From Phallusia mammillata (taxonomy: Eukaryota): DNA of 64,000 nucleotides. The notes under the pieces were generated by a model. It searched no databases. It was not told the origin of the DNA and saw only the letters and a program-made list of their open reading frames with translations. Location of the stretch: positions 1,116,001 through 1,180,000 of the forward strand of contig OZ281501.1 of assembly GCA_965637545.1 (NCBI GenBank). Direction: 5' to 3'. Shown here in pieces: positions 14,701 to 57,344 of the stretch; positions within the stretch are counted from its first letter, which is position 1; each line of letters begins with the position of its first letter. Made by a program: the position numbers and the translations under genes.

Positions 14701-15049
14701 ACGTAGGCTACGTGTATATGGTACGATATTGATTAAGCCAGGTAATGCATAGTACTGCTAATTTATTTACCAGTAACTTTATCTTATGCAGTAGGCCTAC
14801 AAGATCTTATAGAACAGAAGCTTCCAGCCGGGGTAGATTTATTTTTATTGACGTTTAGTGTAAGCAGGGGGGAAATTTATAAAAATTCACGATTAGGTTG
14901 TTAAAAGAAACTGTGATTTTCAGTGTAGAAGTATTTTAAACGGTAAAAATTGCCAAAAAGCTTTAATACTGTACAAATTTTCTGCAGAATGTTGAAAAAG
15001 TAGAAAAAGTGTCGTAAATTCTGAACACTTGATTTACAAACGTTTCATC

Positions 15050-18000
15050 ATGTTGAAACAACTGTTACTGGTTTTGTGTTTGGGCACCTTGAAAGCTCAA
15101 GGCTTCTTCTATTTCAAAAGTAAGTATTAAAGCTCTGCGTTGGTGTCTGTGTTAAAAATAATTTACAAACCGCTATGTAAGTTTGTTTTAATGCAAAAAA
15201 CGTATATCAGGCTATATCTCACGGTACTTAACCGAGCAGAGTGAAATATATGAATATAAACTACTTGGGATTCCATTAAAACTAACAAGAGTTACCAAAA
15301 TAACTGCTGCTGAATAGGCTTTGCGTTAGTGTTTGCTTTAAAAACGTGTGTAAGTTTGTTTTAAAGCATGCTCTGAATATTACAACAACAAGATAAAAAT
15401 GCCAGTTGAGATAACTACAAACATTCACTAATTGGGATGCCACTAAATAACCCAAAACAGAGTCACTAAAACACTTTTTGCAAAACGCAAATATTAAATG
15501 CTTAACTTGCTTTTAGGCAACTGTGATAAGTGGTGCTTTACGGACACATCTTGTCAAGTACCTGGCAACGACACGTGTACAAGATGTCTCCAAGATGCAT
15601 GTGGTAAGTTTGCAATCACTTTTGTGGCTTCTATCCCTAATTTAAACCAAGAGTTCAAAAACGGGCCGCTAATTTGAATTTTTGGGATAGTGTAAGAGAC
15701 TTTTCTTCACATGTACGTGGTTAAACAAACGCACACTTTCTAGAAACAAGACTAGAAATTCTAGAAGCCTACATTAAAGTGAAAGTACCAGTGATGTACA
15801 AAATTCTAGCACAAAAAAGTTATTTCTGATTACCAACGATCGGCTAAAATATTGTTTTACGCGACAGGAAAAGACTTTAACGATCCTTTCGACTCCTATT
15901 TCGGATACAACTGCATCCAATACGCATCCCGGTCAAGCTGGAAGTAAATGTCTGTCTGATTGAGTTGCCAAAACTTCTTTTTTCTAGCTTTGTTTGCAAC
16001 ATAAAATGTTTAGTCTTGCGAAAAAAGTAAGAAAAAGTTTCTAATGTCTTAAATTGTTGGTTTTTGTCACGTCAGGTGTAAAACCAAAAAAAGTTGCCAC
16101 AAACTAATAACCACATGCTTAGCAAAGCCGATACCAAAACGTTTTTCGTTATTTCAACTATCACAGTGCGCTAGTACTCAACCTTTCTATCCATAGACCC
16201 CTTTCCCTCTTAATATAATCTTAAATTGTAACTGAACTTCAACTGATTGTTTCAGGGGAAACGGTGAATGTTACGAGCAATGTGGATCCCAGTCTTACTG
16301 GACAGCTAGATCCCGCAGTCGCAGTTGCAGAAAGTGCCTCAGATCCTGTATTGGTGAGTGGGATTCAAATAATGGTTGTAAGCAAACATGAAATCGGGTC
16401 TAAACCCCAAACACAGTCCGAAACCCGACCCGAACCCGATTTTATTTTCACAACCTCGAGGCCTGAAGGTTGAGTTGAGTTTATTTTGCTTGGTGAAAAC
16501 ACATGGCGTCACATTTGCACTAAAACAATCACCAAGTCGGAAATAGCTACCCAACGTTGAAGCGTTATGTCACTGGGGCTCACAAGTTGGTTAAATTGCG
16601 GAGAAAATGGGGCCGTGTGTGTAGTTAAACCCGAACCATGGCCCTTTTCATTCAAACTCAATCCCTGCGCCAATCTCACTCTCTGGTGAGCTACCGCCAC
16701 ATAATGCTTTGTAACACGGGTAGCTGCAGCGCGTTTAGTTACGAGCCACCAATTGTGATCTTCATTGTTTTGCGCTCCACAACGTTTTAACATTGCGCAG
16801 CTATTTACAGCTTAGTGATTGTTCAGTGCAATTTTGTCGCTGTGTGTTCTTTCACCAAGCGAAATAAACTCAACTCAACTAATGGTTAATCCAGCCTTCA
16901 CAGTACCTTCCACCTTAGAGTGGAATAGTTGACCTTCACACTGGTTCAAAACCTAACGTGCTAACAAACGCTTGTAATACACCTTTGGGATCTGTGATCA
17001 GGTGAAGCTGAGGACACTGGTACATTCTGCAACGCTGAGGACGAGACGGCAAGACGCAAACGCAGCCACGACCGTTTCGAGCCCGAATACAAATCAGGTC
17101 CCAGCTACTGTAAGGGTTGTGTCAATAACCAAACCTGCCCAACTTTGGAGGAACTGTTCGATTCTGCGCCCAAGTTCTGTCGTGATTATGTGGAGATTTC
17201 TTGTGGCAAGATCCCCGAGCAGTTGATGGGTAAATGTTTTTATTTTTTAGGTATAAGTGTTTTAACCAGTTATAATCGAAACCGGACGCCTTTCCTCGTT
17301 GTACACTAAAACCCTATTTAGGCTTGAAAGTTAGATTTACAAGGTCAAATTACGACGCAATTGTGAGCAAGTGTAAAGTCAGGCCCGAATCAAGCCAATT
17401 AATTTTATTCAAGCTTCAGCCCGTAGCCGACTTAAAGCGCCTGGCTCTGCATTTAACTTTAACGTGGAAATAAATAATTGAACATTACACATTTAATTTA
17501 TTTTTAGTATCCCGTTCAAATGTGTAACAACCTTTGCACAGTTCAAAATCATTCGCAATAAGCGGGAATATTTGAAAGCTTTGCAAAATAAAGGCAGTGC
17601 GCTTGCCCGGTGGACAGTTAAAACTTTTTTGCGTTATCAAAATGGGAATGAACGCAACTATTGACCCAATTGATTTATTGTCAAGAGCAGTAGTAATACT
17701 AATTCAAAAACATCCCTAAAATGACCCACCCGTGTGTATAAATTTGTAAACTATCGTTAGAAAGACGATTTTGTACCAGGCTTCACATTAATGCATACAC
17801 ACGGTTCCCTAATGCGCAGTGACGACACAAAGCTTAATACACAAACCGACAATAGCGTTTCCGATTTATTTCCGTACACATCAGGTGCGCACAATGTGCC
17901 ATTGTATGTGTGTGCGGCACGCTAATGCAGCATAAGGGGAGTTCGAATTCGTGTTTTGCCGGAAATATTTTTTCCGTTCCCACTGATGACAGTTTGGTAA

Positions 18001-21000
18001 CAACACCTGTACTGTACACTGCTGTTGTTGATTTTCTAAATGCCTTAGTGTTATTAGTATAGATTTACCCTATAAGTGAAGCAATTTTTCTTATTTTTAC
18101 CACGACCCCTATAAACAGTGGTGGGATTCAGCCGGTTCGCACCGGTTCTATGGTACCGTCTCACTACATTTTATGAGATCGGCGAACCGGTTAGCATAAC
18201 TGGTTACTGTCAATGAACTTTTTGTAACAGAGCCGACTGAAAAATATGACTTTTGTGATAGAACCAGCTGACAAAAATTTGAATCCCACCACTGCCTATA
18301 CATATATAAAACATAAGTGTAAACTCACTCTAGCTATCAGACATAATTTAAACCTAATACAGCGTTTGAATATGTTCAAACTGCGATCAGCTCTGTACGT
18401 TCCTGTAGACTAGCGATCACGACATATTGCTTGGTGGACCGGTTTGATTCGGTTTTTAAGGATAAAGGAAGACAGATGTCAGATGAGCTATAGTTGGTTT
18501 AGATTTAAAACATGACTAGAAAAAGCAATATTTCCAATACAGTCACCAGAAATGGCGTTGTGCGCATAATATATTATTGCCACAAGTGGCGCCAAAGAGT
18601 CTTTGTCGCTCTAAAACTTAAATGAAGCTGTTGTATCTACATGACTGGAATGCTTGCTCTAAATCAGGGGTGTGCAACCTGCGGGTCAAACGTGGCCTAT
18701 TGGTTAAAGTTTGTGCGGCCCGCAGAGACGCTCAGATTTCAAATATACTGGAAAACAAGTCCAATTATTACGTATTAAATTAACGCGTTTCTTTCGCGTG
18801 TCCCCCTTTCACGAAAGCGTTACACAAAGTGGCTCAATAAAAAACGCGGACACCAAATCAACGACAATTCGCTTTAATGGTATGGTCAATTCCGCTTTTC
18901 TTCTGCGGAAAAACGGAAGTATATAAAGCGTCAATCGCACTACAACACGCAGTATAGTGAACATACCGACAGTTTGGCTACAGGGGTTTTGACATTGATG
19001 GTTTGAAAGGCTCTTGCCCCTATGTGCCGGCGCCCATGCCACGAGGCAAGTTGCAAAATAATTGCAACATGCACGGTAAGCAGGCAATTGACCTCACGCA
19101 ATGGAACACTAACTGTTGCGTCACACGGTTATACGTTTTGCCGGACAAAGTTATATTCACAACTGTTGACAAAAATGACGTAACATTTACGTTCGTTTAT
19201 TAAAATTAAAAATCAATTCGTGTTCGAAGTTCTTAACCATGCAGGTTAAATCGACCTCTAAATTTTAATTTGATATGCTTAGAGGTCAAATACAAGTAGA
19301 CAGTTTTTTTTATGTATGCGGGTTTAGTGTGTGAAACAACTTAAAGTTGTCTTCTGTCAAATTTATCTTCAAAAAAATCGGGAAAACGAGGGATTTTTTC
19401 GGTTATCGTGGGCACCCCATAGTTGTGCAGGATGAATTTTTACTATTTTGTTTCAACAGACGAAGACATGAACACTTGGAATATCAGCTGCATCAGAACT
19501 GCGTGGAGCGATTCTTGCTCTCGTTGCCCAGATTTTAACGAAACTCGATGGGACAACTGCGAAAATTGCTTGGATGCTTGCAAACGTAAGATAAAGAACG
19601 GAAAGCGTAGCTTAGGTTTCGCACATACCTTAAATTCGCAATGATGAATGCTTTCGATCTATATTTCATCCATTTAATATGAGGGTAATGCAAAAAGAAA
19701 ATGGATTCTAAGCAAAGAGGTTTTTGTAGACAAAACATAAACCGTAAAAACATAAAAGAAGCAAATAACCTTATGTATGTTAATTCTCATGAATTAAAAT
19801 ACAGTTGCGGCACAAACTGGGAACAAATACAATACTTTCTACGAGTGGTGGGATTCAAATTTTTTGTCAGCCGGTTCTATCACAAAAGCCATATTTTTCA
19901 GCCGGTTCTGTTACAGAAAGTCCATTGACAGTAACCAGTAATGCAAACCGGTTCGCTGATCTCATAAAATTTTATGAGACGGTTCTACAGAACCGGTGCG
20001 TACCGGCTGAATCCCACCACTGCTTTCTACTAATACTAAGAATTATTCCTAATATATTACCTATGTTGTAACGATTCCAACCTAACTGAAGATGCTTAAT
20101 TGCATAAGCGAAATATATTTGTTTTTTAAACTAAAGCCAAACTGATTTCAACCTTGAAATAAACGTTTCAACCTGTGTGAGACTTTTCACCATGTTATTT
20201 TGTTGTGCAGCCAAGGTGGAATGCGCATTGGAATGCCCAAAAACTGGCCAATACCCGATGACCATCCCTTGTGGCTACTGCTTGGCGCTGTGTGAAGGTA
20301 AATGCGTCGTCTGATTACATTGAACATGTTAGGAAACCAACTTTAGCAACGTGCCTCTATACTTGTTCATTTTTTTGGGTAAACAACACAGAAATTTACT
20401 CGCTGAAACTAGTTACCATGAAAGCAGTTTAGAGAAGCTTTATAACAAAAAATAAACGTTAGTATATTGATTCCAGTTGTGAATTTATGTTCTTCTTAAC
20501 TGTATTACAACAGTTTACAACTTTGTTTCACGACATGAGTCTTTCCGGGACTCGCGCTCTACCCACTGAGCTACACAGGCTCAGTAGTGAAAGTCGAATC
20601 ACAAGCACCGTTGTCTTCCATGTCTGTACGCTGCACATGTCAGTTTCGTTGCACGGGATAGCCAGTTCGACCATTGATTACCTAAAGATGAATACATTTT
20701 TACTGGGAACATGACCCATGCAAGTTTGAATCCCACCACAGGCTTGATTTTTCTAGTCGTTTTGCCTTAATTATCATGTCTGGGAATGCCTAGTAGACCG
20801 GCTGATTCAGTATGATGCCTTTAATGGGTCTGGCTTACTACGGTTCCATTTCGTTGGAAAATTTCCAAAATGCCTTACACTAGTAAAAAAATGTACAAGC
20901 CTAAATTTTGTAAAGAAATATTAAACCTTTTTGCCTTCGCAAAAACATTTGCTTGTTGGAGTGAATTGTTGCTATTACTTTATGTAACCACTGTATTAAC

Positions 21001-21300
21001 CCACTCCAGTGTACACTAATGTTTTTGTCTATTACAGCATCAGGCATAGCAGACTGCAACACAACCTACTGCCAAGCAGAATGTACACGCTGTAATAGTT
21101 GTTACATTGCATGTGAAGCTGGTGAGTGCTTACTCCCTTGTAAAGTTGCATAACTTTAGTTATTTAGTTAAGTCAATGCTCGTCAAACCATACAAACATT
21201 TGCGTTTCTTGCTCTTTAAATGAGTCGATTTTTTGCAGATGACTTTATTGAGAATGAATGCACCTGCATACCAGAAAAGAAGGGTTACTGGTGGTATTGA
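15050..21300 (+). CDS. Secreted Cys-rich protein, copy A (305 aa, 37 Cys in the mature part, furin-type RRKR site); family not recognised
   Basis: Exons 15050-15119, 15517-15603, 15868-15943, 16256-16353, 17002-17229, 19460-19585, 20211-20297, 21038-21121, 21239-21300 total 918 nt in frame, all GT-AG. Signal peptide MLKQLLLVLCLGTLKAQG. Ends ECTCIPEKKGYWWY*. Exon-by-exon homology to B, C, D, E and G. Confidence 0.88.
16469..16879. repeat. ~410-bp element with ~40-bp terminal inverted repeats
   Basis: GTTGAGTTGAGTTTATTTTGCTTGGTGAAAACACA at the left end; TGTGTTCTTTCACCAAGCGAAATAAACTCAACTCAAC at the right end. Confidence 0.75.
18116..18294. mobile_element. hAT MITE (CAGTGGTGGGATTCA family), copy 2, inverted
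   Basis: Same TIRs. TSD CCTATAAA/CCTATACA. Confidence 0.9.
19843..20022. mobile_element. hAT MITE (CAGTGGTGGGATTCA family), copy 3
   Basis: Perfect TSD CTTTCTAC at 19835-19842 and 20023-20030. Absent from the paralogous A' start region. Confidence 0.9.
20527..20746. pseudogene. tRNA-like element split by a local inversion (paralog at ~57690-57910)
   Basis: The minus strand at ~20527-20580 reads GCCTGTGTAGCTCAGTGGGTAGAGCGCGAGTCCCGGAAAGACTCATGTCGTG. The plus strand at ~20725-20746 reads GTTTGAATCCCACCACAGGC. Joined, they give complementary acceptor, D, anticodon and T stems. Confidence 0.6.
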
Positions 21301-24515: not shown

Positions 24516-26490
24516 ATAAAGTTTGCATTTGTGTTTTTTATGTTGGTCATTATTCTACAAAGTGAAATTGCAAATTGTTAGTAAATGTTTTGTTTTTGTA
24601 ATTTACATTATTCAGCTTCATTTTTTGTTACAGCTTGCTCAAAATGGTGTTTTCACAAGAAGCGATGTTACCCACCAGTTGACGATGATTGCTCAATGTG
24701 TCTCAAAAACTTTTGTGGTATGTTACTAAATGTCGACAGTTTGCTTCTCACTTTAAACTTATTTTTGTTTATAACAGGAGAAGAGTTTGAGCATTCATTC
24801 GAGACAAACTTTGGAAATAAGTGCATATTCAGAGCGATGAAAGATAAGAACAAATGCAAAAATCGATGTGCAAAAATGACGAACAAACAACTGAAACGAA
24901 AGAGGGATGCCTGTGATGACTGCCTTGACATGTGCATTTGTGGGTTTTTTATTATTTTTTGTTAAACATTTATAACAACCCAATTTCTAAAGTGCACAAA
25001 TAAATGCACTAAGTATGCCCCTTGAACTTGAATAGTTGCGAAATTCTTTTTATCATAATTCGTCAGAAAAAATAGGACACATTTAAACAGATCTTACCAA
25101 AATTTTTTTATTTTAGCTGAGGCCAAAGACAATCCCGAAAATTATTGTAATGGCCATGTTCCACACAAAAACATGTCAGAAGATGCTTCTTCTCCCAAGC
25201 CAACCAATCCCATCAAAATGGCATTCAAGAAAAAGAAGAATGGTGATCGTGGTGATGATGAACATGGAATTGTGCATGGTTGCGACATATGCTATAATGA
25301 TACATATTGCCCTACTCTTGAAGAATTTTATGAAAATATTTCTATAGATTGCCTTGGATATATTGCGCTGAAATGTGAACGTAAGTATAAATGTGTTTGT
25401 TATGTTTACTTGTTTGCAATGTAAAGCATGCATAAAGCGTTTAGTGTTTTTCATGTCATTATTTCAAACTTAGAAAATGCATCTGCACTTCCTCATTTAT
25501 GAACTGCCAAACATCTTTTGGGCATTGTTACAAAACTTTAACTTTTTTCAGTTCTTGCTGACTATAATCAAACGGAGGAGGAATACTTGGCATGTCTTAT
25601 TATAAATTGGGCTGATATTTGCTCAGGATGCCCTCTTGATTGGTTGGAAAGGTTAGCGGCTTGTGGTGATTGTCTACTGACTTGCGAAGGTATATGTCAA
25701 GCAAACTTGTTTTTTGTTGTTGATACTTATGACATCATTAATTACTTAAAGAAACCATCTTGAAAATAGATGACAGCTGAGTTAAGATCTTAAACTCATT
25801 ATTGTATAACTTTGGTTTTAATAACAGTTAACACAGGTTTTACTATAGTAAACATTTTACATTGCAGAGAAGATTGAGTGTGCAAAAAATTGTACCCATA
25901 AACAAGCATGTTATCCAAAGGGCTTGCGATGTGATAAATGTGCAGCCATGTGTAGAGGTTAGTAATATATTACTGGTGTAATTGTCCAATCACTTTTGCA
26001 TCACAAAAACCAATCAATGTACCAGAATAAAAACTTGCTTTTAATATGAACATCAGTAAATTTAAAGGTTATCTTAACTATCTTCAATAGCATTTATCAT
26101 ACCACATGTCTAATTAAAGTCTTGCCAAACTCACTCATGTTTTACGATTTTTGGGGAAAAACAAAATAATGTTGTGTTTTTTATTGCTCTGCAGCTTTGG
26201 GAGGTGATTATGATAGCTGTATAGAAAACAGATGTCCTGAATGTATAACATGCAATGAATGTTATGTTCAATGTGAAGCCGGTGAGTAACATGAATCAAT
26301 TTCCATTTCTAGAATGACAGATAATCACAAAAAGAATTATGAAAATTTAAGTTGTATCCCTAAATAATTCTGCTAACTGTAAAACTGGTAGCCTCTGTAG
26401 TAAACCTGTAGTAATAGTATCTTGTCTTTTTCAGAAAAATATACAAATAATCGCTGTGGCTGCTTTGATGGCTATTATTATCCATGGTGA
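24516..26490 (+). CDS. Secreted Cys-rich protein, copy B (38 Cys); start codon uncertain (ATA at 24516 or ATG at 24540)
   Basis: Exons ~24495-24576, 24634-24717, 24778-24939, 25117-25380, 25552-25689, 25868-25957, 26195-26281, 26435-26490, all phase-1 GT-AG and in frame. Includes SCSKWCFHKKRC. Ends RCGCFDGYYYPW*. Confidence 0.82.
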
Positions 26491-30434: not shown

Positions 30435-33400
30435 ATGTTTAAAGTTTTGTTTGGATTGTTCCTTTTTGCTCTTGTCCTAGAGTACCAGCAGACAAACGGT
30501 AAGATACATTTCTGGGGTTGATATTATTGCTACCCAATACATACGTGTCTTGCTGTTTAGGGCATCTTGGTAAAAGCCCAAATATTTTCCTTTACTTTGT
30601 AGCATATTGTTTTGGTTGAATTCTTCAGTTAACCTTTCTTAGGAATAATTAGCTTTATTGCATCCAGTTAACTCATGAACTTCTATTTCAGCCTGCCCAA
30701 GATGGTGTTTCGCCAAGAACAGGTGTTACTTGCCAGTGAACGACTCATGCACCGATTGTCTCAAAGGCGTTTGTGGTAAGTACAATAGTCAGTTCACCAA
30801 TAACTCAGTTAATGTCATGCTACAACAAAGTAAATATCTCTGTACTGCTTCTGTATTTATGTCTATAGCGTGAAATTCGATACTGATCAACAATAACCAC
30901 AATATGGTTTGTAATCGTCAAGTGTATTGGGACAATAGGTTAAAGATTTTTAATACCGTGTTGTGGACCAAATGTTGCATGTTTTTGCTCATGGCAAATT
31001 ATTGCATTGACTATATAAATAGATGCCGGTAGTGCGTTAGTAGTATCAAGAACGCAACCTTAATACAAATCTGTCTGCTTTCTGATTTCTATTTAAATCA
31101 ATTAACACAAATCTCTTTTACACTCAAACTGTTTTCACGCGAAGTTATTACCAGTTTTGCCGATTCTTGTAGTACTGTTGTTTTCAAACTAAAAAGGAAG
31201 AATTACTATTGTTCTGACAGGCGAAGACTTTCCAAAGCCATTCAAAACTGAGTTTGGAAGAGCCTGTGTCTTTCGCGCCATGAAAAGAAACGCAGATTGC
31301 AAAAAAGAATGTGGATCAATCAGTACGAAGAAATTAAACAACTACAACAAGGCTTGCAAAAAATGCCTTCGCCCATGTATTGGTAAGTTTCAAAGTGGAA
31401 TTTACAAAGTTGGGATTTTGTATTTCTTACTAATTTTTTTGGGTCTTTTATAAGTCGTTGAAAACAAAAACTTTTTAATAGGTGTTCGGCAAACTAACAA
31501 ACTTGATATTGATATTTTTTCCGACTCCTATTCGTAATAAAAAACACAAAATGTCATTCAGCAAACTTCAACGTGATAGATAAGGACAAAAATCAAGAAA
31601 ATAAGGTTTTAACTATGCCTTGTACATTCGCATTTCAATACAAATCCCTGAAACGTGAAATCCTGTCATAACGAGTATTTTCGCTTCATATGCGTGTTGT
31701 AACTTTTCATGCGATTTTGTAAAAACTTCTTGCTTGACTTTGTCCTTGAAAATGAAAAACTCACGTTTGTTTTGTAGAGGAGGCCAAAGAAACGCCAGAA
31801 AATTACTGCGAGGGTACTCTCCCAGAACCACCACCACCTCTCCCAGCAGCAAGTTCCCCATTCGATCCTGTAAAACTGGTGAAGGAAATGATGCAACCAA
31901 GCGCCGACGATAATATGACGATGACTTCTCGACCATGCGGTCCCTGTTACGACGGAACGAGCTGTCTAACTGACATGGAGACGGAACAACTGCCGCCGTT
32001 TTGCCTCACGTACATCTTCACAAAATGCTCAAGCAAGTGCAAAATAATATTCTTTAAAAATATGGTTTAACTTAATGATTTTTTTTTAAATGCAAGCGAT
32101 CCCGATTTTCGGTTTATCGCAAGTTTGTTAAACGTTAATGTCTGCAGTATTTCTAAATTGTGAGCATAACTTGGTCCAAACTCGTCATAAGTTCATTAAC
32201 AAATACGTCAAAGAGCTGAAGCTGGTGGTTGTGGATCGGCCAAATGAGCTGAACGATTTCTCGTCGCCGGCTGCACTGTTGAGACCTTCTAGGTCCAAAC
32301 GGTGTGCACTGTCTGCAGCTTATCATGTGATAGCTCTATGCTTGTAGATCAGTGGTTCCCAACCTGGGGTTCGCGGACCCCCTGGGGGTCCGTGAGATGG
32401 TTTTAGGGGGGTTGGAAACAATTTTTAAGTTGCCAAACCGTTTTTTACAATTCTGCATACAAGTGCTAAATGTTTATCAAACCTTTGGATCAAAAATTTA
32501 ATTTTTTTGATTTTTATGTGATTGCTACCTCCATTGTGACATCACAACACACATGAACAATAGACTTTATAGTGCTTTGTTCAAAGTGTACACCATAAAA
32601 TTTATTTATTTCTTGCAGTGGCTGGTACTAATTCTTTAAGGACTGTGGGGGTTGAATAAAATGCTGCCTCAAAAAGCGAAAGTATAAGAACATGTGATGC
32701 AAGAAACGAAAAACATAACAAGACTAGACTACTTTGGGGGTCCGCTGACCTATAAAATTTATAACAGGGGTTCGTGACTACAAAAAGGTTGGGAACCACT
32801 GTTTTAGATAAATAAGTTTATAGTTTTCGAAAATTTTTGATTTACACAGTTTGGTGACTTATATTATCTTTGTAGTGGACCCAGGCGGCCTAAATGCCTT
32901 CGAGTGCCTCGCCCAGAAATGGGCAGATCCATGCTCTGAGTGTCCCGGCGACTTCGATGTAAGCCGACTTCCGGCCTGTGGAGACTGTCTCCTTAATTGT
33001 TCAGGTAAGAAAATTTGTAATACTACGTCACTACAAATGTCATGCTTGCTAACAAACAGTGATCACAAGCAAATTTGTAAAACAGTCCAAAACGTTTGTA
33101 CGAAAACCTAGCACACGTTGTTCGTAAAAACACAAAACCTGTTTTAAACTTGATTGCAAGACACACAGGATGACGTCACAAATAATGACGTCATACGTTT
33201 GCTCAAAGCTTAGAACATGACTTTAAAGCAGCTACGCCTCTTTTGATAGATCACTCTAATAATGTACAGGTAAATTTTTATTATGAAGTCACGGTCACAT
33301 TACGTCATAGGTTCACTTGTGACGAAAACTTTGTGATGCTTAACACTGCAAATTATTAATCAGAATTTTGTGCGGGCCCTTGAACAAACAATATTGTATT

Positions 33401-34269
33401 GTTGTATTTTTCAGCGAAGACTGTATGTGCATTGCAATGCGAGTTTTCGAGACCAATGTACCCATTGTCCATCCCGTGTTCAAAGTGCGCTGGTCTCTGC
33501 AGAGGTGAATTTACCTTCAATTCAACGTTGTCATTGATGCAGCCCTTCACAAATTGTTGCTTAATGATTTTATTACATAATGCTGGAGATAGCCGGCCGC
33601 GGATAAGCTCCTGTCGTGGGTTTGAATCCCACCGCAGGTTACATTTTTTTAGTTTACATTGAAAAAGGCTCTTGATTAGAGATTTCAGAATCGCAAATTA
33701 ATTACTTTAATATTAAAAAAAGAATATTAGAAATACGAATGACCTAATGTTTTGAACTTACGTTTAATGCCATCAAGGTTTATTATAGTTTTCATCCACC
33801 AAGCAATGATCTGGATGTTTTCAGATTAAAAACTTTTTTTATTGTTGCAGTGACACCTGGTAATTTTGATACGTGCATGCGGAATAAATGTCCGGATTGT
33901 AATGATTGTAACGCGTGTTTCGACGAGTGTGAAGCTGGTGAGTAATTTGATCCGCTCACTTGGTTGCTCACCCCTACAAATCCTTTATGTTAACAGCACG
34001 ACATAAAAACACTTGAGCAGGGAAATTAGGCACTGCCACTGCTTTACTCAAAATCTAGCAATCCAAAATATACATTTTTTATCAACTTAGCAGTTGTCGG
34101 CGTGAAATAAGTAATAATTTAAACCTTTAATTTGCTGTGTAAGGATGAAGCTAACATGCTACACATGAAATTGCCAGGAACGCTTGGTACTAATGACACT
34201 CACTTGTCTATTTCAGAGGGTTACGTGAAGAATCAATGCAGCTGCTTCAGGCCTTTTGAATTTTTGTAA
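30435..34269 (+). CDS. Secreted Cys-rich protein, copy C (37 Cys, poly-Pro linker, one GC-AG intron)
   Basis: Exons 30435-30498, 30692-30775, 31221-31382, 31778-32032 (GC donor), 32876-33004, 33415-33502, 33851-33938, 34217-34269. MFKVLFGLFLFALVLEYQQTNACPRWCF... ends QCSCFRPFEFL*. Confidence 0.87.
32350..32801. mobile_element. hAT MITE (CAGTGGTTCCCAACC family)
   Basis: CAGTGGTTCCCAACCT ... AGGTTGGGAACCACTG. TSD TTGTAGAT/TTTTAGAT. Confidence 0.85.
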
Positions 34270-36951: not shown

Positions 36952-39900
36952 ATGTTGAAAGTTTTGTTTGAATTGCTCCTTTTTGCTCTTGTACTAGAGT
37001 ACCAGCAGACAAACGGTAAGATGCATTTCAGGGGTTGATATTATTGCTACCCAATATATACGTGACTTGCTGTTTAGGGCGTCTTGGTAAATGTGTAAAC
37101 GTTTTCCTTTACTAGTAGATTTTTTCTGTTGAACTCTACTCAACTTTTTTGCGGATTAATTAGCTTTATTGTATCCAGTTAACTAATGAACTTCTATTTC
37201 AGCCTGCCCAAAAATGGTGTTTCGCCAACAGCAGGTGTTACCGGCCACGAATGAACAGCTGCACCGATTGTCTTAAAGGCGTTTGCGGTAAGTACAATTG
37301 CTAGTTTACCAGCACCGCTGGGAATGTCTTATAACCAGTGTAATCAGTTTTTTTAAGGTTTAGTTTGGGTGACCGCTAAGTAGTTTTAAGAGACCGCAAG
37401 TGTTTCTTTTAAATACCAAAAAATAGCCATATTTGCTTAAACGAATTATTTATTAGGCTACTGGCAAATTTTGGGAAACCGCTGGAGAAATTAAAAAAAA
37501 CGGTCCCCCAAAACCGAAACGGTCCCCCAAAACACCTTAAAAAACACTGAGTGTAATATTTGTACTGCTTCTGTATCTACGTTGTAGAGTAAAATTTGTA
37601 ATAACAATCACCACAGAATTGCAAGTTCATATGGTTTGTGGTTGTCAAGTTTTACTTGATTTTAATATCATGTTGGTGACCAAATGTTGCATGTTTTTGC
37701 TCATGGCAAACTATGGCATTGACCGCAAATCAATACCGGTAGTGCCTTACACTAAAAACTAGAAATATTTAACAGCGTTTTAAATTGGGGATGAATACAA
37801 AATATTTCTGTTGTTTTATTACTATAACCACAGTTGATGTGTTCGATGAACTGTTGAGGAAAAAATTATATTGTTCTGGCAGGCGAAGACTTTATGAACC
37901 CATTCGAAACAGACTTTGGAAGAGTCTGTGTTTTGCGCGCCATGAGATTAAAATCACAATGCAAAGAAATATGTGGATCAGTCAATGTGAACAAATTAAA
38001 GAGACTCAACACGGCTTGCAAACAATGCCTTAAGCCATGTATTGGTAAGTTTCAAACTCGAATTTACAAAGCTGACATACTGTATTTCTTGCTGATTTGT
38101 TTCGTGTCTTTTATAAGTCGCAGTTGTTGTTTGTTTTGTTTTTTTCGGAAAAACAAAAACTTTTTACTGAGAATTCGGCAAACTAACAAACTTGATTTTT
38201 TTCCGGCACCAATTTGGAATAAAATCACAAAATGTTATTCAGCTAAATACAATGTGATGTGTGAGAACAAAAATCAACAAAATAAGGTTTTAATTATGCC
38301 TTGTACATTATCATTTTGTCATAAACCCTGAAACGTGAAATCCTGTCATAACGAGTATTTCACTCCGCGCGTTGTAACTTTTTATGCGATTTTGTAAAAA
38401 CTTCTAGCTTGACTTTGTTGCCTGAAAACGAAAAAACTCGCGTTTGTTTTGTAGAGGAGGCCAAAGAAGCATCAGAGCCCCTGCATCACAACCCTTAGCA
38501 ACAGACTTCCTTATCAATCCTGTAAAACTGGCGATGGAAGTGATGAAACCGAGGGCCGCCGAAAATATGACGATGCCTTCTGAACCATGCGGCTCCTGTT
38601 ACAACGCCCAAACCTGTCCAACTGAAATGGAGATGAATGAACTGCCGCCGTATTGTCTCACATACATCCTCTCAAAATGCTTAACAAGTGCAAATTGTAA
38701 AAACAAGCTGCAATGTTTCACTTAAAGCAGTTTGTTTTTACAAATTTAGGCGATTTCGTTTTACTGCATATCAAATCTTAAAACTTCACTAGTTTCGAAA
38801 ATGTTTCGGTCCTCACTTCGCCGAAATGGAGTTGACATGACAAGGCGACCTGTATAGAACGTCACACGTCGGAATGAAATAACAATTGCCAGAAGAGCTC
38901 TATAAACTTGATATTATGCCTGGCAGAAATAGCTTATATAAATAAGTTTATAAATTTTTTAAAATGTTTTGGCCTACACAGTTCAGTAACCTCTATAATC
39001 TTTGCAGTAAACAACGAAACGGCCAACCAAACGCCATTCGAGTGCTTTGCCGAACATTGGAATGATTCATGTTCTACTTGTCCCGCAGACTTTGATGCAA
39101 CCCGCTTCATACGATGCGAAGACTGTATCACTACTTGTCCAGGTAAGAAACTTTGCAAACCTTCGCCATTACAAATGCTATGCTTGCTAATAAACAGTGA
39201 TCAAATGCGAAGTTGTAAAACAGCGCAAAATGATTGCACGAAAACCTAGCTCTCGTTGTTCAGTAAAACACAAAAAACTTGAATGCAAGACACACAAGAT
39301 GACGTCACAAACAATGAAGTCATACGTTTGCTTAAAACATAAAAATGACTTTGGGGTGACCGCATCCAAATCTGCAAAACGCTCCGGCGTTCGTAAACAC
39401 ATCACAAATAGTTGGCTACACCTTTTTTGATAAACCACTTTAATAATGCACAGATAAAGTTTTTTTAGGACGCCAAGGTCGCATTATGTCATAGGTTCAC
39501 TTGTGACGAAAACCTTGTGATTCTTAAAACTGCAAATTATCAATCTGAATTTTGAGAAAGCCGTTGCAAATTGTTGTTGTTGTAATTTTCAGAAAAGATC
39601 ATATGTGCATTGAACTGCACGTTTGACAGACCAATGTACCCCATGAAGATCCCGTGTGCAAAATGCGCTGGTCTCTGCAGAGGTGAGGTTACCTTAAATT
39701 CAACGTTGTAATTGATACAGCCCTTCACAAATTTTTGCTTAATTATTTCACCACATAATATCAGAGGGTGCCGGCCGCGGATAAGCTCCTACCGTGGGTC
39801 GAATCCCACCACAGGTTGCATTTTTTTAGTTTGCATTGGAAAAGGCTCTTGATTAGAGATTTCAGAAGCGTAAATTCGACAAGTCTGAAGACGTCCTTTG

Positions 39901-42900
39901 TTTTTTTTATTATTATTTTTAGATATACATATATTTCACCCAAGTAATAGGCATCATCAGTATATAAAAGCAAATTGTTATACGCGACTGTTGTCTCCGT
40001 CTGTCGTACTGAGTTTTGGGTGACTCGTGATTTACGATATACTACACACGTAAATTACTTTCATTACTTTAATATTAGAAAAAATATATATTAGTTAGAC
40101 GAATGACTTAGTGTTTTGTTGAACTTACATTTACTGCCGTAATGTTCATTATAGTCTTCATCCACCAAGAAATGAGCTAGATGTTCAACTTTACGTTTGG
40201 AGAATACAATTAGGTGTAGAACACTAAATATTTACTTCATGTATGCACTCTGGCAGTTTTGCTTTAAATTTTTGTTGCAGTGACACCTGGTGATGTAGAT
40301 AAGTGCATTCAGAATAAATGTCCGGACTGTGCCGATTGTGACACGTGTTTCGACGAGTGCGAAGCTGGTGAGTAATTCACTTGGTTGGTCCCTGCGCATT
40401 TTTTTATTTTATAACGACATAAAAACACTCGAGCGGGGAAATTAAGCACTGCCACTGCCTGACTTAAAAACTAAAAATCAAAAATATACAATATTTTTCA
40501 ACTTAGCTTGTCGGCCTGAAAATAGTAATCATTTAAGCTTTTAATTTGCTGAGCAAGAGTGAAGCTAACATGGTACAGTATTTTTAAAGCAGTATTTTAA
40601 AGCTTAGAATTTACTGTGGAGCAAGAAGATGTGTGGAATGTAAACAAAAAAAAATCTCCAACACGAAACTGCTATTTACCCCACAAACCACATTGACAAT
40701 TTATTGCTGCTTTTTAACTATACACTGTAAATTGAAATGGTGGAAAACAAAGGGTGGGGAAAATATAAGGTGGTATGATCCACCTTTTGGGGTGGTACAG
40801 CTTAAAAGGTGTAATTTCACACCATTTTAAGACCAAATTTCCACCCGTCCTATAGTATTGGTGTAAATACCAACCCTCAGTTCTCACGAGTGTGGGTATA
40901 TGCGCAAAGGTATTTTAAAAGACGCGGTAACACATTGCTAATCGTTCGAAACAATTTGGGTACTGCAATAACTTGCAATTAGGCGGTCAATACGGGATTT
41001 AGATCATTTGGTGCTAGGATTTCTCTTCCGTTTTCATTGCGGTTAAGGTTTGGAAATATGTTCAAGCCGTGGAAATACGACATTGGAGGTTTGGAATTGT
41101 ATTTACTCTAGTATAAATGATTACTATACTGACAAATAAACCAGGTAGTATATTTGTATTTAAACAACGCATCTTTTTACAACAAACCTTCCTATAACTG
41201 CAGTCCATGTAACGTAAGTTGAAATATTTTTTCAGAAGTTTAAGGCAGATGTTAGTACCCTACATGTTACTTTTACGTTCTAAGAGCGAAATCCGTAGCA
41301 GCAATGTATGGCAGTCGCGACTTAGAACTGTAACCAAACGAGCCAGTGGCATTTTTTGAAAAAAAAAACATGCACATTTATCACGCTGGATCTCATCAAC
41401 GCGACGTATGCACGATATACAGTATACATCATAATATTAGGGAAGTAGGTAGAAATACGAGTATAATTAAAATGAACAAATTACCGGTGAAAAAGTTTTC
41501 ATTGTTAGTGAAGCTTTAGCAACACAGCAAGATATAGATTGTCGCATAACAATTCCAATTGTTACATCAGACAGAATTCTGGGATCGTCCAAGCTGAGTT
41601 GCAGGGGCATGTTTGTTTTATTATGACGTTTGCGGTTAGCCACACCCAGAGTTCAGCTTGCGCAGACGCCACGTTTTGTGCCGATTTGGAGGATTTGGAG
41701 TTTGGTTGCGGATCGGAAACAGTTTTAAGGTTTGTTGGTTATACTTTTTGTTCACCTTGCAAACTGACCAGTAACTGGATGCATATTAAAGTTTTTAAAA
41801 TGTATGGAGTTGTGTAGTAGACCTGTGCATCTCTAACCTATTTTATTGCGTGACCAAGTCAACGTTTTTTCAGAAAAAAATGGCCCACTTTCTCATCAGT
41901 ATGGCTAGCAGGTCTTGATAATTGGTACATCAGCACTTTACAAACTACTATATGGCCGACAACCTAATTAGTTCAGAAACACTGGTGCAGACAATACTGC
42001 TTGTCCATTAGTTTTTGGATTATTTTATATGCATTTGGTAATTGTTGGTTTTGTGGATTGGTTGTGTTAAGTATAAAAATACCTTTTAAAATTATATGTA
42101 TCAGCAATATAGAGTCAACCTGTAGGTTCATTAAAAGTGAGTTGTGTATGTTGTTTTTCTTGCAACTGATAAAGTATGTACATTTGAAGACAAATCTCAG
42201 ATCAAAATAAAAAAAACAATGTAAGCTGGAATTTTATGTCCACATGAAACTGAAACGTGTGTTTGCCAATGCATTTCTAAAAAAAACTTCTTTAATATTC
42301 AAGAAATGAACATCATCATGTGACTGTGCCGCCATTGTGTTGCACAATAAACTTTTGCTCCAGAAAGTATTCTTCACCAAACCAAAGGGTGTCAAAAATA
42401 TTTTACATTTCGGTTTAAATGGTGGTGTTATAGGGGTTTCGTAAAATATGACATGTTTAATTTCCAAACGAGTCAGTGAGTGCTTATGTAATGTGCAAGA
42501 GCATTCTCTGAAATGTACATATAGATAATAATTTAGGTTGCTTTTTATCTGCTGTATCATCCTTGTTACCGTCATTAAGGTTATTTTTGTTTGCAGATTA
42601 AAAAGTAAATATGGAATATCATGTGACCTGTGGTGAGAGAAAAGTGATATCAAAACTGGATGTGACCAATCAAATTGAGACTACATTCAATATCACCCAT
42701 CCATTCTCAATTCAGCTTTACTCACAAACGTTTAATGACTGGGTGGATGTAGATAATCCAACAGATTTGCCAGAAAGTGGCAAACTTCTTGTCAAAGGTA
42801 TTTGCATGTAATACAATACATCAGTTGCTTAGAAATATGCGATTAAATAATTTTTAGATTGTTTGCCGGAGATACAAAATGATAATGAGACTGCAACACA

Positions 42901-49682: not shown

Positions 49683-52600
49683 ATGTTTGGATTGTTCCTT
49701 TTTGCTCTTGTACTAGAGTACCAGCAGACAAACGGTAAGATGCATTTCAGGGGTTGATATTATTGCTACCCAATATATACGTGACTTGCTGTTTAGGGCG
49801 TCTTGGTAAATATGTAAACGTTTTCCTTTACTAGTAGATTTTTTCTGTTGAACTCTACTCAACTTTTTTGCGGATTAATTAGCTTTATTGCATCCAGTTA
49901 ACTAATGAACTTCTATTTCAGCCTGCCCAAAATGGTGTTTTGCCAAGAACAGGTGTTACTTGCCAGTGAACGACTCATGCACCGATTGCCTTAAAGGCGT
50001 TTGCGGTAAGTACAATAGTCAGTTCACCAATACCTTAGGTCCAGGGTCGGTAACCGAGGAGTTCGTTACCTTTTCAGGTTAAATGCTGCATTTTGCCCAT
50101 GTATCCCGGTGATGATAAACTAATTTAAGCGTTTTATTGCAAAATACTTGTTGTTTTTTTAAGACCTGTACGCAATAAAATTTTACTGTTAAAAAAGGTC
50201 CGCAGTGCAAAAAAGGTTACCGACCCTTGTAATAGGTCATATGTTTTCAATATCATTTTATTCACCAAATGTTGCATGTTTTTGCTTATGGCAAACCATT
50301 GCATTGGCTGTAAATAGATACCGGTAGTGCCTAGTAATATCAAGAACACAACCTTAATACAAATCTGTCTGCTTTCTATTTAAATCAATTAGCTCAAATA
50401 TTTTTTACACTCAAACTGTTTTCACGCGAAGTCATTACCAGTTTTGCCGATTCTTGTAGTACTGTTGTTTTCAAACTAAAGAGGAAAAATTACTATTGTT
50501 CCAACAGGCGAAGACTTTCTGAATCCATTCGAAACACAATTTGGAAGAGCCTGTGTCTTTCGCGCCATGAGAAGAAATCCAGACTGCAGACAAGAATGTG
50601 GATCAGTCAACAAGAAGAAATTAAACAACTACAACAAGGCTTGCAAACAATGCCTTCGCCCATGTATTGGTAAGTTTCAAAGTCGAATTTACAAAGCTGA
50701 GATTTTGTATTTCTTGCTGATTTGTTTTCGATCTTTATCAAGGCGTTGTTATTGTTTGTTTTTTCGGAAAAACATAAGCTTTTTACTAGGTGTTCGGCAA
50801 ACTAACAAACCTGATTTGTTTCCGGCTTCCATTTGTAATAAAAACACAAATTGTTATTCCGCTAAAATCATATTAACGATATACTAATACATAAATCGTC
50901 CTGATCCACGCATGCTGAACAGACGATTTCAGTCACATATATTGACATTTATTAGCTGACTAATTCAGCACACTTTAATCAGTCTGTATATTTATTATTG
51001 CAAAACCTTTGGCGATCGATTTCGCCCAAATATATGGCATCGTCAGTCCTTATTCAAATAGAATACCTAAAATCAATGTGATGTGTAAGAACAAAAATCA
51101 ACAAAATAAGGTTTCAACTTTGCCTTGTACAATCGCATTTGATCATAAAGCCCTGAAACGTGAGATCCTGTCATGACGAGTATTTCGCTTTATATGCGTG
51201 TGGTAACTTTCCACGCAAATTTGTAAAAACTTACTGCTTGACTTTGTTGCCTGAAAACGAAAAACTCGCGTTTGTTTTTTAGAGGAGGCCAAAAATGCAT
51301 CAGCGAACTACTGTGAGGCCCCCCCAGGTCCCCCAGGCCCCCCAGGCCCCCCAGGCCCCCCAGGCCCTCAAGCCCCTGCATCACAACCCTTAGCAACAGA
51401 CTTTCTAATCAATCCTGTAAAACTGGCGATGGAAGTGATGAAACCGAGCGCCGCCGAAAATGTGACGATGCCTCCCCAGCCATGCGCTCCCTGTTACGAC
51501 GGAACGAGCTGTCTAACTGAAATGGAAATGATTGAAGTGCCACCGTTTTGTCTTACATATCTCCTTTTAAAATGCTTATGCAAGTGAAAATTGATATTCT
51601 TTAAAAACAAGCTGCAATGTTTACCTTGGAGCAGTTTGTTTTTTTGCAGATTTAGGCGATTTTGTTTTACTGCATATCAAGTTTAAAAGCTTTAGCCAAT
51701 CATTAGTTACGAAAATGTTTCGGTCCTCACTTCGCAAAAATGGATTTGACTTGACAACGCGACCTGCATAGGACGTCAAACGTCGGAATGAAACAACAAT
51801 TGCTAAAAAACTCTATAAACTAAATGTTATGCCTGGCAGCAATATCTTATTTAAATAAGTTGATAGTTTTTTAAAAGAAATTTTGGCCTACACAGTTCAG
51901 TGACCTCTATAATCTGTGTAGTCAACAACGAAACCGACACCAACCAAACGACCTTGGAATGCTTTGCCGAGCATTGGAATGATTCATGCTCTACTTGTCC
52001 CGTAGACTTTGATCGTACGCTGCGAAGAGTGTATCACTACTTGTCCAGGTAAGAAACTTTGTAAACCTTCGCCATTACAAATGCCATGCTTGCTAATAAA
52101 CAGTGATCACAAGCAAATTTGTAAAACAGCCCAAAATGCTTGTACGGAAACCTAGCACACGTTGTTCGTTAATAACACAAAACTCGTTTTAAACTTGATT
52201 GCATGACCCAGAGGAAGACGTCACTAACAATGAAGTCATATGTTTGCTCAAAACTAAAAAAATGGCTTTGAGGTGACCGCATCCAAATTTGCAAAACGGT
52301 CATGCGTTCGTAAACACATAAATAGCTAGCTACGACTCTTTTGATAAATTACTCAAATATATGCAGACAAGGTATTTTGTGACGTCACGGTCGCATTACG
52401 TCATTGGTTCACTTGTGACGAGCACCTTGTGAAATCTGCAATATATCAATCTGACTTTTTGTGCAAGCCGTTGTATGTTGTTGTTGTTTGTTTCAGAAAG
52501 GATCACATGTGGATTGAGCTGCCCGTTTAACAGAACAATGTACCCAATGAAGATGCCATGTGCAGAATGCGCTAGTCTCTGCAGAGGTGAGTTTACCTTA

Positions 52601-57290: not shown

Positions 57291-57344
57291 CATATTTTTC
57301 TGCCTTCTCTGAGATTTTCGAACCAATATGAATTGCTTTTTAGT

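What the first reader, a model, noticed from the sequence alone, without database searches (positions are those of the whole stretch)
15517..21300. Roughly one 6-Cys module per exon, mostly phase-1 introns, vanabin/turgencin-like spacing
Seen: internal exons carry 6,6,6,6,5(6 in B),6 Cys. Examples are C-x3-C-x5-C-x7-C-x2-C-x4-C (exon 2) and C-x3-C-x5-C-x6-C-x2-C-x3-C (B exon 6). Every intron in B, C and G is phase 1, so any module can be skipped or duplicated in frame. Recalled, to verify: ascidian vanabins (C-x2-4-C repeats) and turgencin antimicrobial peptides use C-x3-C-x4-C-x6-8-C-x2-C-x3-C disulfide-laddered helical hairpins. Inference: a beads-on-a-string polymer of that hairpin, built by exon duplication, with combinatorial splicing potential.
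Basis: partly seen in the sequence, partly recalled or inferred. Interest (0 to 1): 0.7.

Follow-up and report, generated by a model that had tools for sequence, protein, structure and literature searches.

The report
Orphan sea-squirt six-module cysteine-rich secreted protein
This is an intact sea-squirt gene for a secreted protein with 37 cysteines, laid out as six different small cysteine modules with about one module per exon; it belongs to a tandem family with no known relatives, and it resembles vanabins and turgencin only in cysteine spacing.

Summary
Gene A (15050-21300, + strand) has nine GT-AG coding exons. They encode a signal peptide, six cysteine modules (6, 1+5, 6, 6, 5 and 6 Cys) and a C-x-C tail, giving 306 aa. 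Seven of its eight introns are phase 1.

The same six modules, in the same order, recur in eight full-length loci and two 3' fragments, all on one contig. Every module cysteine is invariant.

- Spacing: two module types do match turgencin A's spacing and that of this genome's own vanabins.
- Vanabin test: no module matches Pfam Vanabin-2, although equally short pieces of the true vanabins do. Only module 5 gives a marginal profile match, driven by the cysteine framework.
- Fold: models are helical but of low confidence (pLDDT 66 and about 55).
- Repeat origin: the six modules are not detectably related to each other and their number is fixed. This is a fixed six-module architecture, not a variable bead polymer.
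- Disulfides: cysteine parity (module 5 has 5 Cys; 37 in the mature protein) means some disulfides cross exon borders, or one thiol is free.

Function is unknown. My best guess is an extracellular binding or defence protein. The scan met this family before through its scattered member (s1-392434).

The parts
15050..15119 (+). Gene A exon 1: ATG and signal peptide (MLKQLLLVLCLGTLKAQG...), phase-1 donor gtaagt
   Evidence: paralogues C, D, E, G, H and S have an equivalent hydrophobic first exon with a phase-1 donor
15517..15603 (+). Exon 2 = module M1, 6 Cys, C-x3-C-x5-C-x7-C-x2-C-x4-C; W, F, P and L are invariant
15868..15943 (+). Exon 3 = first part of module M2 (DF..PF..FG..C), 1 Cys; ends in phase 2
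   Evidence: homologous to the N-terminal third of the single-exon M2 of the paralogues
16256..16353 (+). Exon 4 = rest of module M2, 5 Cys (C-x3-C-x14-C-x2-C-x3-C), Arg-rich, net +4
   Evidence: the intron before it (15944-16255) is single-copy in the genome
17002..17229 (+). Exon 5 = module M3: one Cys, then a variable acidic linker with RRKR (in gene A only), then a 5-Cys core (C-x2-C-x5-C-x13-C-x7-C)
   Evidence: the linker is 26-56 residues long, Pro-rich and hypervariable in the paralogues
19460..19585 (+). Exon 6 = module M4, 6 Cys (C-x8-C-x2-C-x10-C-x2-C-x3-C), acidic, two N-x-S/T sites; modelled as helix-loop-helix
   Evidence: pLDDT 65.7; helices at residues 8-16 and 29-39
20211..20297 (+). 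Exon 7 = module M5, 5 Cys (C-x3-C-x11-C-x2-C-x3-C); same framework as the last hairpin of this genome's vanabins (CAxxCP...Y...CxxC)
21038..21121 (+). Exon 8 = module M6, 6 Cys (C-x4-C-x3-C-x2-C-x2-C-x3-C), acidic
21239..21300 (+). Exon 9 = tail: N-E-C-T-C, then an aromatic end (GYWWY) and TGA
   Evidence: a C-x-C plus aromatic tail is conserved in B, C, F, G and S
24634..26490 (+). Paralogue B: compact (introns 60-237 nt), all exons phase 1-1, M5 with 6 Cys; first exon not identified
30435..34269 (+). Paralogue C: full set of signal, M1-M6 and tail; M3 donor is GC-AG (gcaagt after 32032)
36952..40367 (+). Paralogue D: M1 exon 37204-37288 carries one extra A in a homopolymer run, which is either a frameshift or an assembly error
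49683..53105 (+). Paralogue E: an 11-nt deletion in M4 shifts the frame, so it is probably a pseudogene; (GPP)n run in the M3 linker
57334..59183 (+). Fragment F: copy of the 3' end of gene A (M5, M6, tail and flank), 78-87% DNA identity; exons 93-99% identical without indels
62430..64000 (+). Paralogue G: signal, M1, M2 and M3; continues beyond the window (M4-M6 and tail are in L005)

Best explanation
Gene A is an intact member of a tandem family of secreted, probably N-glycosylated proteins of about 300 aa. Outside this genome the family was sought only in prokaryote-and-metagenome-based protein libraries, and none was found. The family has eight full-length loci and two 3' fragments.

Shown: the architecture is fixed. 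It runs signal peptide, M1, M2, a hypervariable Pro-rich linker, the M3 core, M4, M5, M6 and a C-x-C aromatic tail, with each module on its own symmetric phase-1 exon. All cysteines are invariant. Other residues change fast in the young copies (dN/dS 0.5-1.2). The old copies, A included, are held under long-term purifying selection.

Inferred: each module is a small helix-loop-helix stapled by disulfides. M2 and M5 are cationic; M3, M4 and M6 are anionic. The modules pack into two compact disulfide-rich blocks joined by the variable linker. The odd number of cysteines (37) leaves one thiol free for a covalent dimer or for attachment to a partner.

The most likely role is an extracellular binding or defence protein, with a rigid disulfide scaffold displaying fast-evolving surfaces. 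This is inferred from secretion, birth-and-death tandem evolution and scaffold-conserved, surface-variable substitution. The family resembles vanabins and turgencins in design but is not a demonstrable member of either.
For: Gene model and phases. Cysteine excess beyond chance. Same six modules in the same order in A, B, C, D, E, G, H and S, with invariant cysteines. Module profiles hit only the array at C8:1.131-1.195 Mb and one copy at 6.79 Mb. Signal-peptide first exons. Conserved tails. No Pfam family at E<=10. No PDB sequence match. No hit among 1.84 billion protein representatives with the M2 profile. No word-search candidate. No atlas look-alike. dN/dS: young clade 0.5-1.2; B against three of the young copies (C, E, G) at most 0.26, the only deep pairs where a ratio could be computed; for A and S dS is saturated, with dN 0.40-0.69. 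Helical models: M4 at pLDDT 65.7 with two helices; the M2 part has four helices at pLDDT 53-58. Charge pattern and N-x-S/T sites.
Against: The structure models are of low confidence and give no coordinates for disulfide pairs, and M1, M5 and M6 could not be modelled properly. No fold match was found. The function rests on analogy only. High dN/dS in the young clade may partly reflect decay, since D and E carry frame defects and F is a fragment. The protein libraries searched may hold few tunicate proteins, because not even this gene's own product was found, so 'no relatives' is weaker than it looks.
Confidence: 0.55

Rival explanations
1. The family is a distant, secreted, six-module relative of the vanabins and binds or reduces metal ions (vanadium or others) through Lys/Arg-rich faces and reversible disulfides.
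For: The genome has five true vanabin genes. Each is built of three 6-Cys units, with a phase-1 intron after the first unit and spacing of the same type. M5 aligns over its whole length with the last vanabin hairpin (CAxxCP..Y..CxxC): hhalign P = 4e-4 to 9e-5, and 1 of 300 full column shuffles reaches that score. M2 is strongly cationic, net +4 to +10. Vanabins are so far known only from ascidians (PMC9486056).
Against: No module hits Pfam Vanabin-2 at E<=10, whereas 28-35 aa pieces of the true vanabins score 15-27 bits. A genome-wide Vanabin-2 search finds nothing in this window. With the cysteines held fixed, 10 of 300 shuffles reach the M5 score, so the signal is mostly the framework. A local HMM built from the vanabin exon gives only 5-9 bits on the family's exons, and on a different unit. 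The other four modules compared (M1, M2, M4, M6) show nothing; M3 was not compared.
Confidence: 0.14
2. The protein is a polyprotein precursor that is cut into single hairpin peptides of the turgencin type, which act as antimicrobial peptides.
For: Turgencin A's spacing, C-x3-C-x4-C-x8-C-x2-C-x3-C, with a ladder connectivity and helix-loop-helix character, is close to M1 and to M5 of B. M2 and M5 are cationic and Lys/Arg-rich. The genes for the turgencins are unknown (PMC7024374). Gene A has an RRKR site in the M3 linker.
Against: There are no dibasic sites between modules. RRKR is present only in A and is not conserved. The turgencin motifs CxMAC and KKxGG are absent from every module listed. 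Modules abut with 5-9 residues between cysteines, and cysteine parity argues for disulfides between modules. Half of the modules are acidic.
Confidence: 0.07
3. The protein is a structural extracellular protein of the tunic, mucus or egg coat, cross-linked through its odd cysteine, with the Pro-rich (in E and G collagen-like) linker as a spacer.
For: The cysteine count is odd (37) in most members. The linker is Pro-rich and carries GPP repeats in E and G. There are many N-x-S/T sites. Tandem multi-copy families are common for abundant secreted matrix proteins.
Against: Structural proteins are usually repetitive and of low complexity, whereas this one has six distinct, tightly conserved cysteine frameworks and fast-changing surfaces. 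B has an even count (38). There is no expression or localisation evidence.
Confidence: 0.14
4. One reading: a bead polymer made by exon duplication, whose phase-1 exons are mixed by alternative splicing into many isoforms.
For: All internal exons except the split M2 pair are symmetric 1-1, so skipping any of them keeps the frame. A 168-nt inverted MITE-like pair flanks A's M4 exon, a layout that could favour looping out of that exon. This last point is an inference.
Against: The modules are not detectably alike. No locus has more or fewer than six modules apart from the truncated fragments. Skipping M5, or the M3 exon (a 5-Cys core that would take the lone upstream Cys with it), would break the disulfide parity further. 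No RNA data could be obtained.
Confidence: 0.05

Closest known systems
Vanabins (Pfam PF11437 Vanabin-2; Vanabin2 of Ascidia sydneiensis samea)
   Same: Ascidian proteins dense in cysteines, built from 6-Cys units with C-x3-C ... C-x2-C-x3/4-C spacing. They have a signal peptide and a phase-1 intron after a 6-Cys unit in this genome's own copies. The published fold is helical and disulfide-laddered: 18 Cys, nine disulfides, bow shape (PMC9486056). M5 shares the framework of the last vanabin hairpin and a few of its residues.
   Different: There is no significant sequence or profile match. The family has 37 Cys in about 283 mature residues against 18 in about 90. It has six unlike modules on six exons, against three units on two exons. 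Half of its modules are acidic. Its locus lies on another contig.
Turgencins A and B (antimicrobial peptides of the ascidian Synoicum turgens)
   Same: Six cysteines with none adjacent. Turgencin A's spacing, C-x3-C-x4-C-x8-C-x2-C-x3-C, is within one or two residues of M1 and of M5 in B. Turgencin has helix-loop-helix character and is cationic, like M2 and M5.
   Different: Turgencins are free 35-36 aa amidated peptides carrying the CxMAC and KKxGG motifs. Here the modules are embedded in a 306-aa protein without processing sites and lack those motifs. Disulfide connectivity here is unknown.
Plant alpha-hairpinins and vicilin-buried peptides (C-x3-C-xn-C-x3-C helical hairpins, often several per precursor). 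This comparison rests on my own knowledge of the class.
   Different: They have four cysteines per hairpin, come from a different kingdom, and their precursors are processed. The structural match is not significant.
Other orphan cysteine-module families noted by this scan in the same genome (s1-392397, s1-408679)
   Same: Exon-encoded six-cysteine modules in secreted sea-squirt proteins, reported there as helical and as not vanabins.
   Different: Profiles of M1, M2, M4 and M6 find nothing outside contig C8 at E<=0.01. Those families are therefore not detectably the same family.

Membership tests
Vanabin (Pfam PF11437 Vanabin-2) | Match to the Vanabin-2 profile | tested here: not met
   Ten module exons were scanned at E<=10 without a Vanabin-2 hit. 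The genome-wide search at E<=1 finds five genes on contig C1 and none in this window. Control: 28-35 aa pieces of those true vanabins score 15-27 bits.
Vanabin (Pfam PF11437 Vanabin-2) | Core domain with 18 conserved cysteines forming nine disulfides (PMC9486056) | tested here: not met
   The mature protein has 37 Cys in six unlike modules plus a tail. Only M5 repeats a vanabin unit's framework, and it has 5 Cys instead of 6.
Vanabin (Pfam PF11437 Vanabin-2) | Bow-shaped all-helical fold | tested here: inconclusive
   M4 and M2 are modelled as helical at pLDDT 66 and about 55. No match to Vanabin2 or to anything else was found in the PDB. The full-length model was not attempted because the joined step was left out.
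Vanabin (Pfam PF11437 Vanabin-2) | Vanadium binding and V(V) reductase activity | not testable with these tools
   This needs recombinant protein and EPR or reductase assays.
Turgencin | Six non-adjacent Cys with turgencin spacing (Cys 8, 12, 17, 26, 29, 33) | tested here: inconclusive
   M1 (3-5-7-2-4) and M5 of B (3-5-6-2-3) are close to turgencin A (3-4-8-2-3). The other modules are not.
Turgencin | Shared sequence motifs CxMAC and KKxGG (PMC7024374) | tested here: not met
   Neither motif occurs in any module sequence listed.
Turgencin | Free 35-36 aa C-terminally amidated peptide with C1-C6/C2-C5/C3-C4 connectivity | not testable with these tools
   There are no conserved dibasic or Gly-basic processing sites between modules. 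Connectivity needs mass spectrometry or NMR.
EGF-like / knottin / other beta-rich cysteine domains | Profile match or beta-rich fold | tested here: not met
   No Pfam cysteine-domain family hits at E<=10. The M4 model and the M2 part of the read-through model contain only helices; M1, modelled without an alignment at pLDDT 33-40, shows two short strands and is not informative.

The most novel reading that the evidence does not exclude
Vanabins (three units), turgencin-type peptides (one unit) and this six-module secreted family are branches of one ascidian-specific superfamily of disulfide-laddered helical hairpins, assembled from phase-1 exon units. If so, this family would be the first multi-module secreted branch. 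It would also point to the kind of gene to look for as the unknown turgencin precursor.
Probability: 0.12. Interest if true: 0.6.

Novelty: new variant of a known kind. Interest (0 to 1): 0.36.

Why it matters
Ascidians have two well-studied kinds of cysteine-laddered helical mini-proteins. Vanabins act in vanadium accumulation, and turgencins are antimicrobial peptides whose genes are unknown. This family shares their design and is also built of exon-sized units, but it is secreted, much larger and evolving fast at its surface. It is a concrete candidate for testing whether these ascidian proteins share an origin. It also adds an undescribed family to the list of secreted tunicate proteins that might act in defence or recognition. 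On present evidence it remains an orphan of unknown function, so its weight is moderate.

Tried and rejected
- Relatives elsewhere: the M2 profile against 1.84 billion representatives gave 0 hits. The word search with A's M3 exon gave no candidate. Two ESM atlas queries gave nothing at or above 0.9. PDB sequence searches with M1, M2 and M4 gave nothing.
- B read-through of M1, its 60-nt open intron and M2, tried as a way to model two modules by reference: pLDDT 47.5. The M1 part had no alignment and is unreliable. The 20 intron-encoded residues are not part of the protein. MAFFT misaligned the M2 pieces onto M1 when both were supplied.
- Inter-module homology: hhalign gave probabilities of 1-19% and only the terminal C-x2-C-x3-C motif in common. 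This rejects demonstrable exon duplication.
- Intron 15944-16255 as a mobile 'introner': rejected, because it is single-copy in the genome.
- A frame defect in C, E and G at the M3 donor: rejected in favour of GC-AG donors (gcaagt) that restore phase 1.
- M6's C-x2-C-x2-C-x3-C as an iron-sulfur motif (Fer4_4, E = 0.045, below cut-off): regarded as a composition artefact in a secreted protein.
Full report
**What is there.** The window comes from a sea-squirt genome of 240 Mb (contig C8:1116001-1180000).

Reading 15000-21800 and joining candidate exons in a local script gives one open frame of 306 codons on the + strand. It has nine exons, each with an AG acceptor and a GT donor:
- 15050-15119: start codon and a hydrophobic signal peptide.
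- 15517-15603: M1, 6 Cys.
- 15868-15943 plus 16256-16353: M2, 1 + 5 Cys.
- 17002-17229: M3, 6 Cys.
- 19460-19585: M4, 6 Cys.
- 20211-20297: M5, 5 Cys.
- 21038-21121: M6, 6 Cys.
- 21239-21300: tail with C-x-C, then the stop.

Seven of the eight introns are phase 1. The exception, 15944-16255, is phase 2. It splits a module that is one exon in every paralogue and is single-copy DNA.

The cysteine density is far beyond chance. None of 296 open AG..GT segments of like size elsewhere in the window reaches 6 Cys, and P is 1.3e-3 per exon.

**How the spliced model was searched.** The joined protein was not sent to any database, family, fold or structure tool. The joined translation was used only inside local scripts, to check the frame and, to lay it on the window itself to find paralogues.

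**The family.** The window holds seven loci, labelled A to G by me:
- A.
- B at 24.6-26.5 kb: compact, with M5 carrying 6 Cys.
- C at 30.4-34.3 kb.
- D at 37.0-40.4 kb.
- E at 49.7-53.1 kb.
- F at 57.3-59.2 kb: a copy of A's last three exons at 78-87% DNA identity.
- G from 62.4 kb: runs off the window.

Fetching the neighbouring DNA shows the rest of G, a further M5-M6-tail fragment, and an eighth gene H (L005, L007). One scattered member, S, lies 5.6 Mb away (L006).

Profiles of M1, M2, M4 and M6 hit only these places in the whole genome. The family therefore has eight full-length loci and two 3' fragments.

All loci have the same six modules in the same order, a signal-peptide first exon (not found for B) and a tail of N-x-C-x-C plus aromatic residues. 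Every module cysteine is invariant.

Several copies show features of decay or unusual splicing:
- C, E and G use GC-AG donors (gcaagt) after M3, which keeps the intron in phase 1.
- D has one extra A in a homopolymer run at the start of M1.
- E has an 11-nt deletion in M4.

The array therefore evolves by birth and death.

**Selection.** Among the young copies (C, D, E, G, H), dS is 0.15-0.37 and dN/dS is 0.5-1.2, while the cysteines never change. For the old copies, a ratio could be computed only for B against C, E and G, where dN/dS is at most about 0.26. For A and S, dS is saturated and dN is 0.40-0.69. The scaffold is conserved and the surface changes fast. Part of that signal may come from decaying copies.

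**What the modules are.** No Pfam family matches any of ten module exons at E<=10. Further searches also came back empty:
- No PDB chain matches by sequence.
- The M2 profile finds nothing among 1.84 billion protein representatives.
- The word search with A's largest exon finds no candidate.
- The ESM atlas gives no look-alike.

These libraries did not even return this gene's own product. They evidently hold little from this animal or its kin, so absence there is weak evidence.

AlphaFold2 on the M4 alignment (A first, 7 rows) gives two helices joined by a loop at mean pLDDT 65.7. The second model was a read-through of B's M1, its open 60-nt intron and M2. It has pLDDT 47.5. Its M2 part is four helices at pLDDT 53-58, and its M1 part, which had no alignment, is unreliable.

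The support for helical hairpins is nevertheless weak. Fold searches find only generic helix-loop-helix neighbours.

**Are the modules copies of one another?** Profile-profile comparison of M1, M2, M4, M5 and M6 gives probabilities of 1-19%. Alignments cover only the shared end motif C-x2-C-[L/A/I]-x2-3-C.

A common origin by exon duplication is plausible from the shared phase and motif, but it cannot be shown. No recent duplication or loss of a module is seen in any locus.

Spacing between modules is short in the second half of the protein: 5, 7 and 9 residues between the last Cys of one module and the first Cys of the next for M4-M5, M5-M6 and M6-tail. The only long, variable stretch lies inside exon M3. 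It is 26-56 residues long, Pro-rich, and has GPP repeats in E and G. The picture is two compact cysteine blocks joined by one variable linker, not beads on a string.

Parity also argues against self-contained beads. M3 has a 5-Cys core plus one Cys on the far side of the linker, M5 has 5 Cys in all members but B, and the tail has 2. The mature protein therefore has 37 cysteines. Some disulfides must cross exon borders, or one thiol is free. This is inference from counts.

**Vanabins.** The genome has five true vanabin genes in tandem on contig C1, all above the Pfam Vanabin-2 cut-off. Read directly, each has two coding exons:
- A first exon with the signal peptide and a 6-Cys unit (C-x3-C-x2/3-C-x5/6-C-x3-C-x3/4-C).
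- A phase-1 intron.
- A second exon with two more 6-Cys units (C-x3-C-x6-C-x4-C-x2-C-x3-C and C-x4-C-x3-C-x12/13-C-x2-C-x4-C).

Membership nevertheless fails:
- No module hits Vanabin-2, while pieces of the true vanabins no longer than a module score 15-27 bits.
- Only M5 aligns with a vanabin unit over its full length (CAxxCP..Y..CxxC; hhalign P 4e-4 to 9e-5).
- Column shuffles show this is mostly the cysteine framework: 1 of 300 shuffles reaches the score when all columns move, but 10 of 300 do when the cysteines stay fixed.
- A local HMM of the vanabin exon gives the family's exons only 5-9 bits.

**Turgencins.** Turgencin A has Cys at 8, 12, 17, 26, 29 and 33, a C1-C6/C2-C5/C3-C4 ladder and partial helix-loop-helix character. 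Its gene is unknown (PMC7432809, PMC7024374).

M1 (3-5-7-2-4) and M5 of B (3-5-6-2-3) come close to its 3-4-8-2-3 spacing, and M2 and M5 are cationic. But the turgencin motifs CxMAC and KKxGG are absent. There are no conserved processing sites between modules, and the RRKR in A's linker is not conserved. The resemblance is one of design.

**Most likely function.** The protein is secreted, rigidly cross-linked and probably glycosylated, with a conserved scaffold and fast-changing surfaces. It is encoded in a tandem array that gains and loses copies.

That profile fits extracellular binding or defence proteins best. Metal handling in the vanabin manner, a cross-linked matrix role, and processing into peptides are the rivals. 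None could be tested here.

**Novelty.** I found no paper describing such a family: 'vanabin-like' gives no hits, and the one paper listed for ascidian plus cysteine-rich plus helical hairpin is a plant-peptide review. The scan itself met the family before. Note s1-392434 describes the scattered member S, which I confirmed to be the same family, and it also judged that gene not to be a vanabin. Two other cysteine-module families noted in this genome (s1-392397, s1-408679) are not detected by my module profiles.

**Verdict.** The gene family is real and undescribed, and the exon-module observation is correct. The family shares its design with vanabins and turgencins, but kinship is unproven, and the polymer and splicing ideas are unsupported.

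Noticed in passing
window 18113-18280 and 19858-20025: Two copies of a MITE-like element of about 170-185 nt (ends GGTGGGATTCA...TGAATCCCACC) lie in opposite orientation in the introns on either side of A's M4 exon. The arms are 168 nt long and 89% complementary. Such pairs can favour exon looping or circular RNA; this was not tested.
   Followed up: partly
G000:C1:24529897-24544553 (L001-L004): A tandem cluster of five true vanabin genes (Pfam Vanabin-2, 28-38 bits). Each has a first exon with the signal peptide and a 6-Cys unit, a phase-1 intron, and a second exon with 11-14 Cys in the matched stretch (12 once the two upstream Cys of L002 are set aside; one position is not Cys in L001 and L004).
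   Followed up: partly
window 32027-32040, 51570-51585, 63985-64000: The M3 donors of paralogues C, E and G are GC-AG (gcaagt) instead of GT. H has gtaagt at the same place, and D has lost one base and uses a GT three bases downstream.
   Followed up: yes
window 37204-37288: Paralogue D's M1 exon has CCCAAAAATGG where E has CCCAAAATGG. The extra A shifts the frame and removes the first Cys. It could be a homopolymer assembly error or a real defect.
   Followed up: partly
window 51922-52050: Paralogue E's M4 exon lacks 11 nt that are present in D and G, which shifts the frame. E is probably a pseudogene, unless the exon is skipped, which would keep the frame.
   Followed up: partly
window 51310-51375 and 63700-63780: (GPP)n collagen-like runs sit inside the hypervariable M3 linker of E and G. 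They are absent from A, B, C, D, H and S.
   Followed up: no
window 24718-24777: B's intron between M1 and M2 is only 60 nt and is open in frame, so retaining it would add 20 hydrophobic residues without a stop. All of B's introns are short (60-237 nt), against 117-2230 nt in A.
   Followed up: partly
L005:5286-6326 (G000:C8:1185286-1186326): A further fragment holding only M5, M6 and the tail lies between G and H. It is a second 3' partial copy, like F.
   Followed up: no
window 15944-16255: This phase-2 intron is specific to gene A, single-copy in the genome, and comes with four extra residues in M2. It is an apparent intron gain inside a module.
   Followed up: partly
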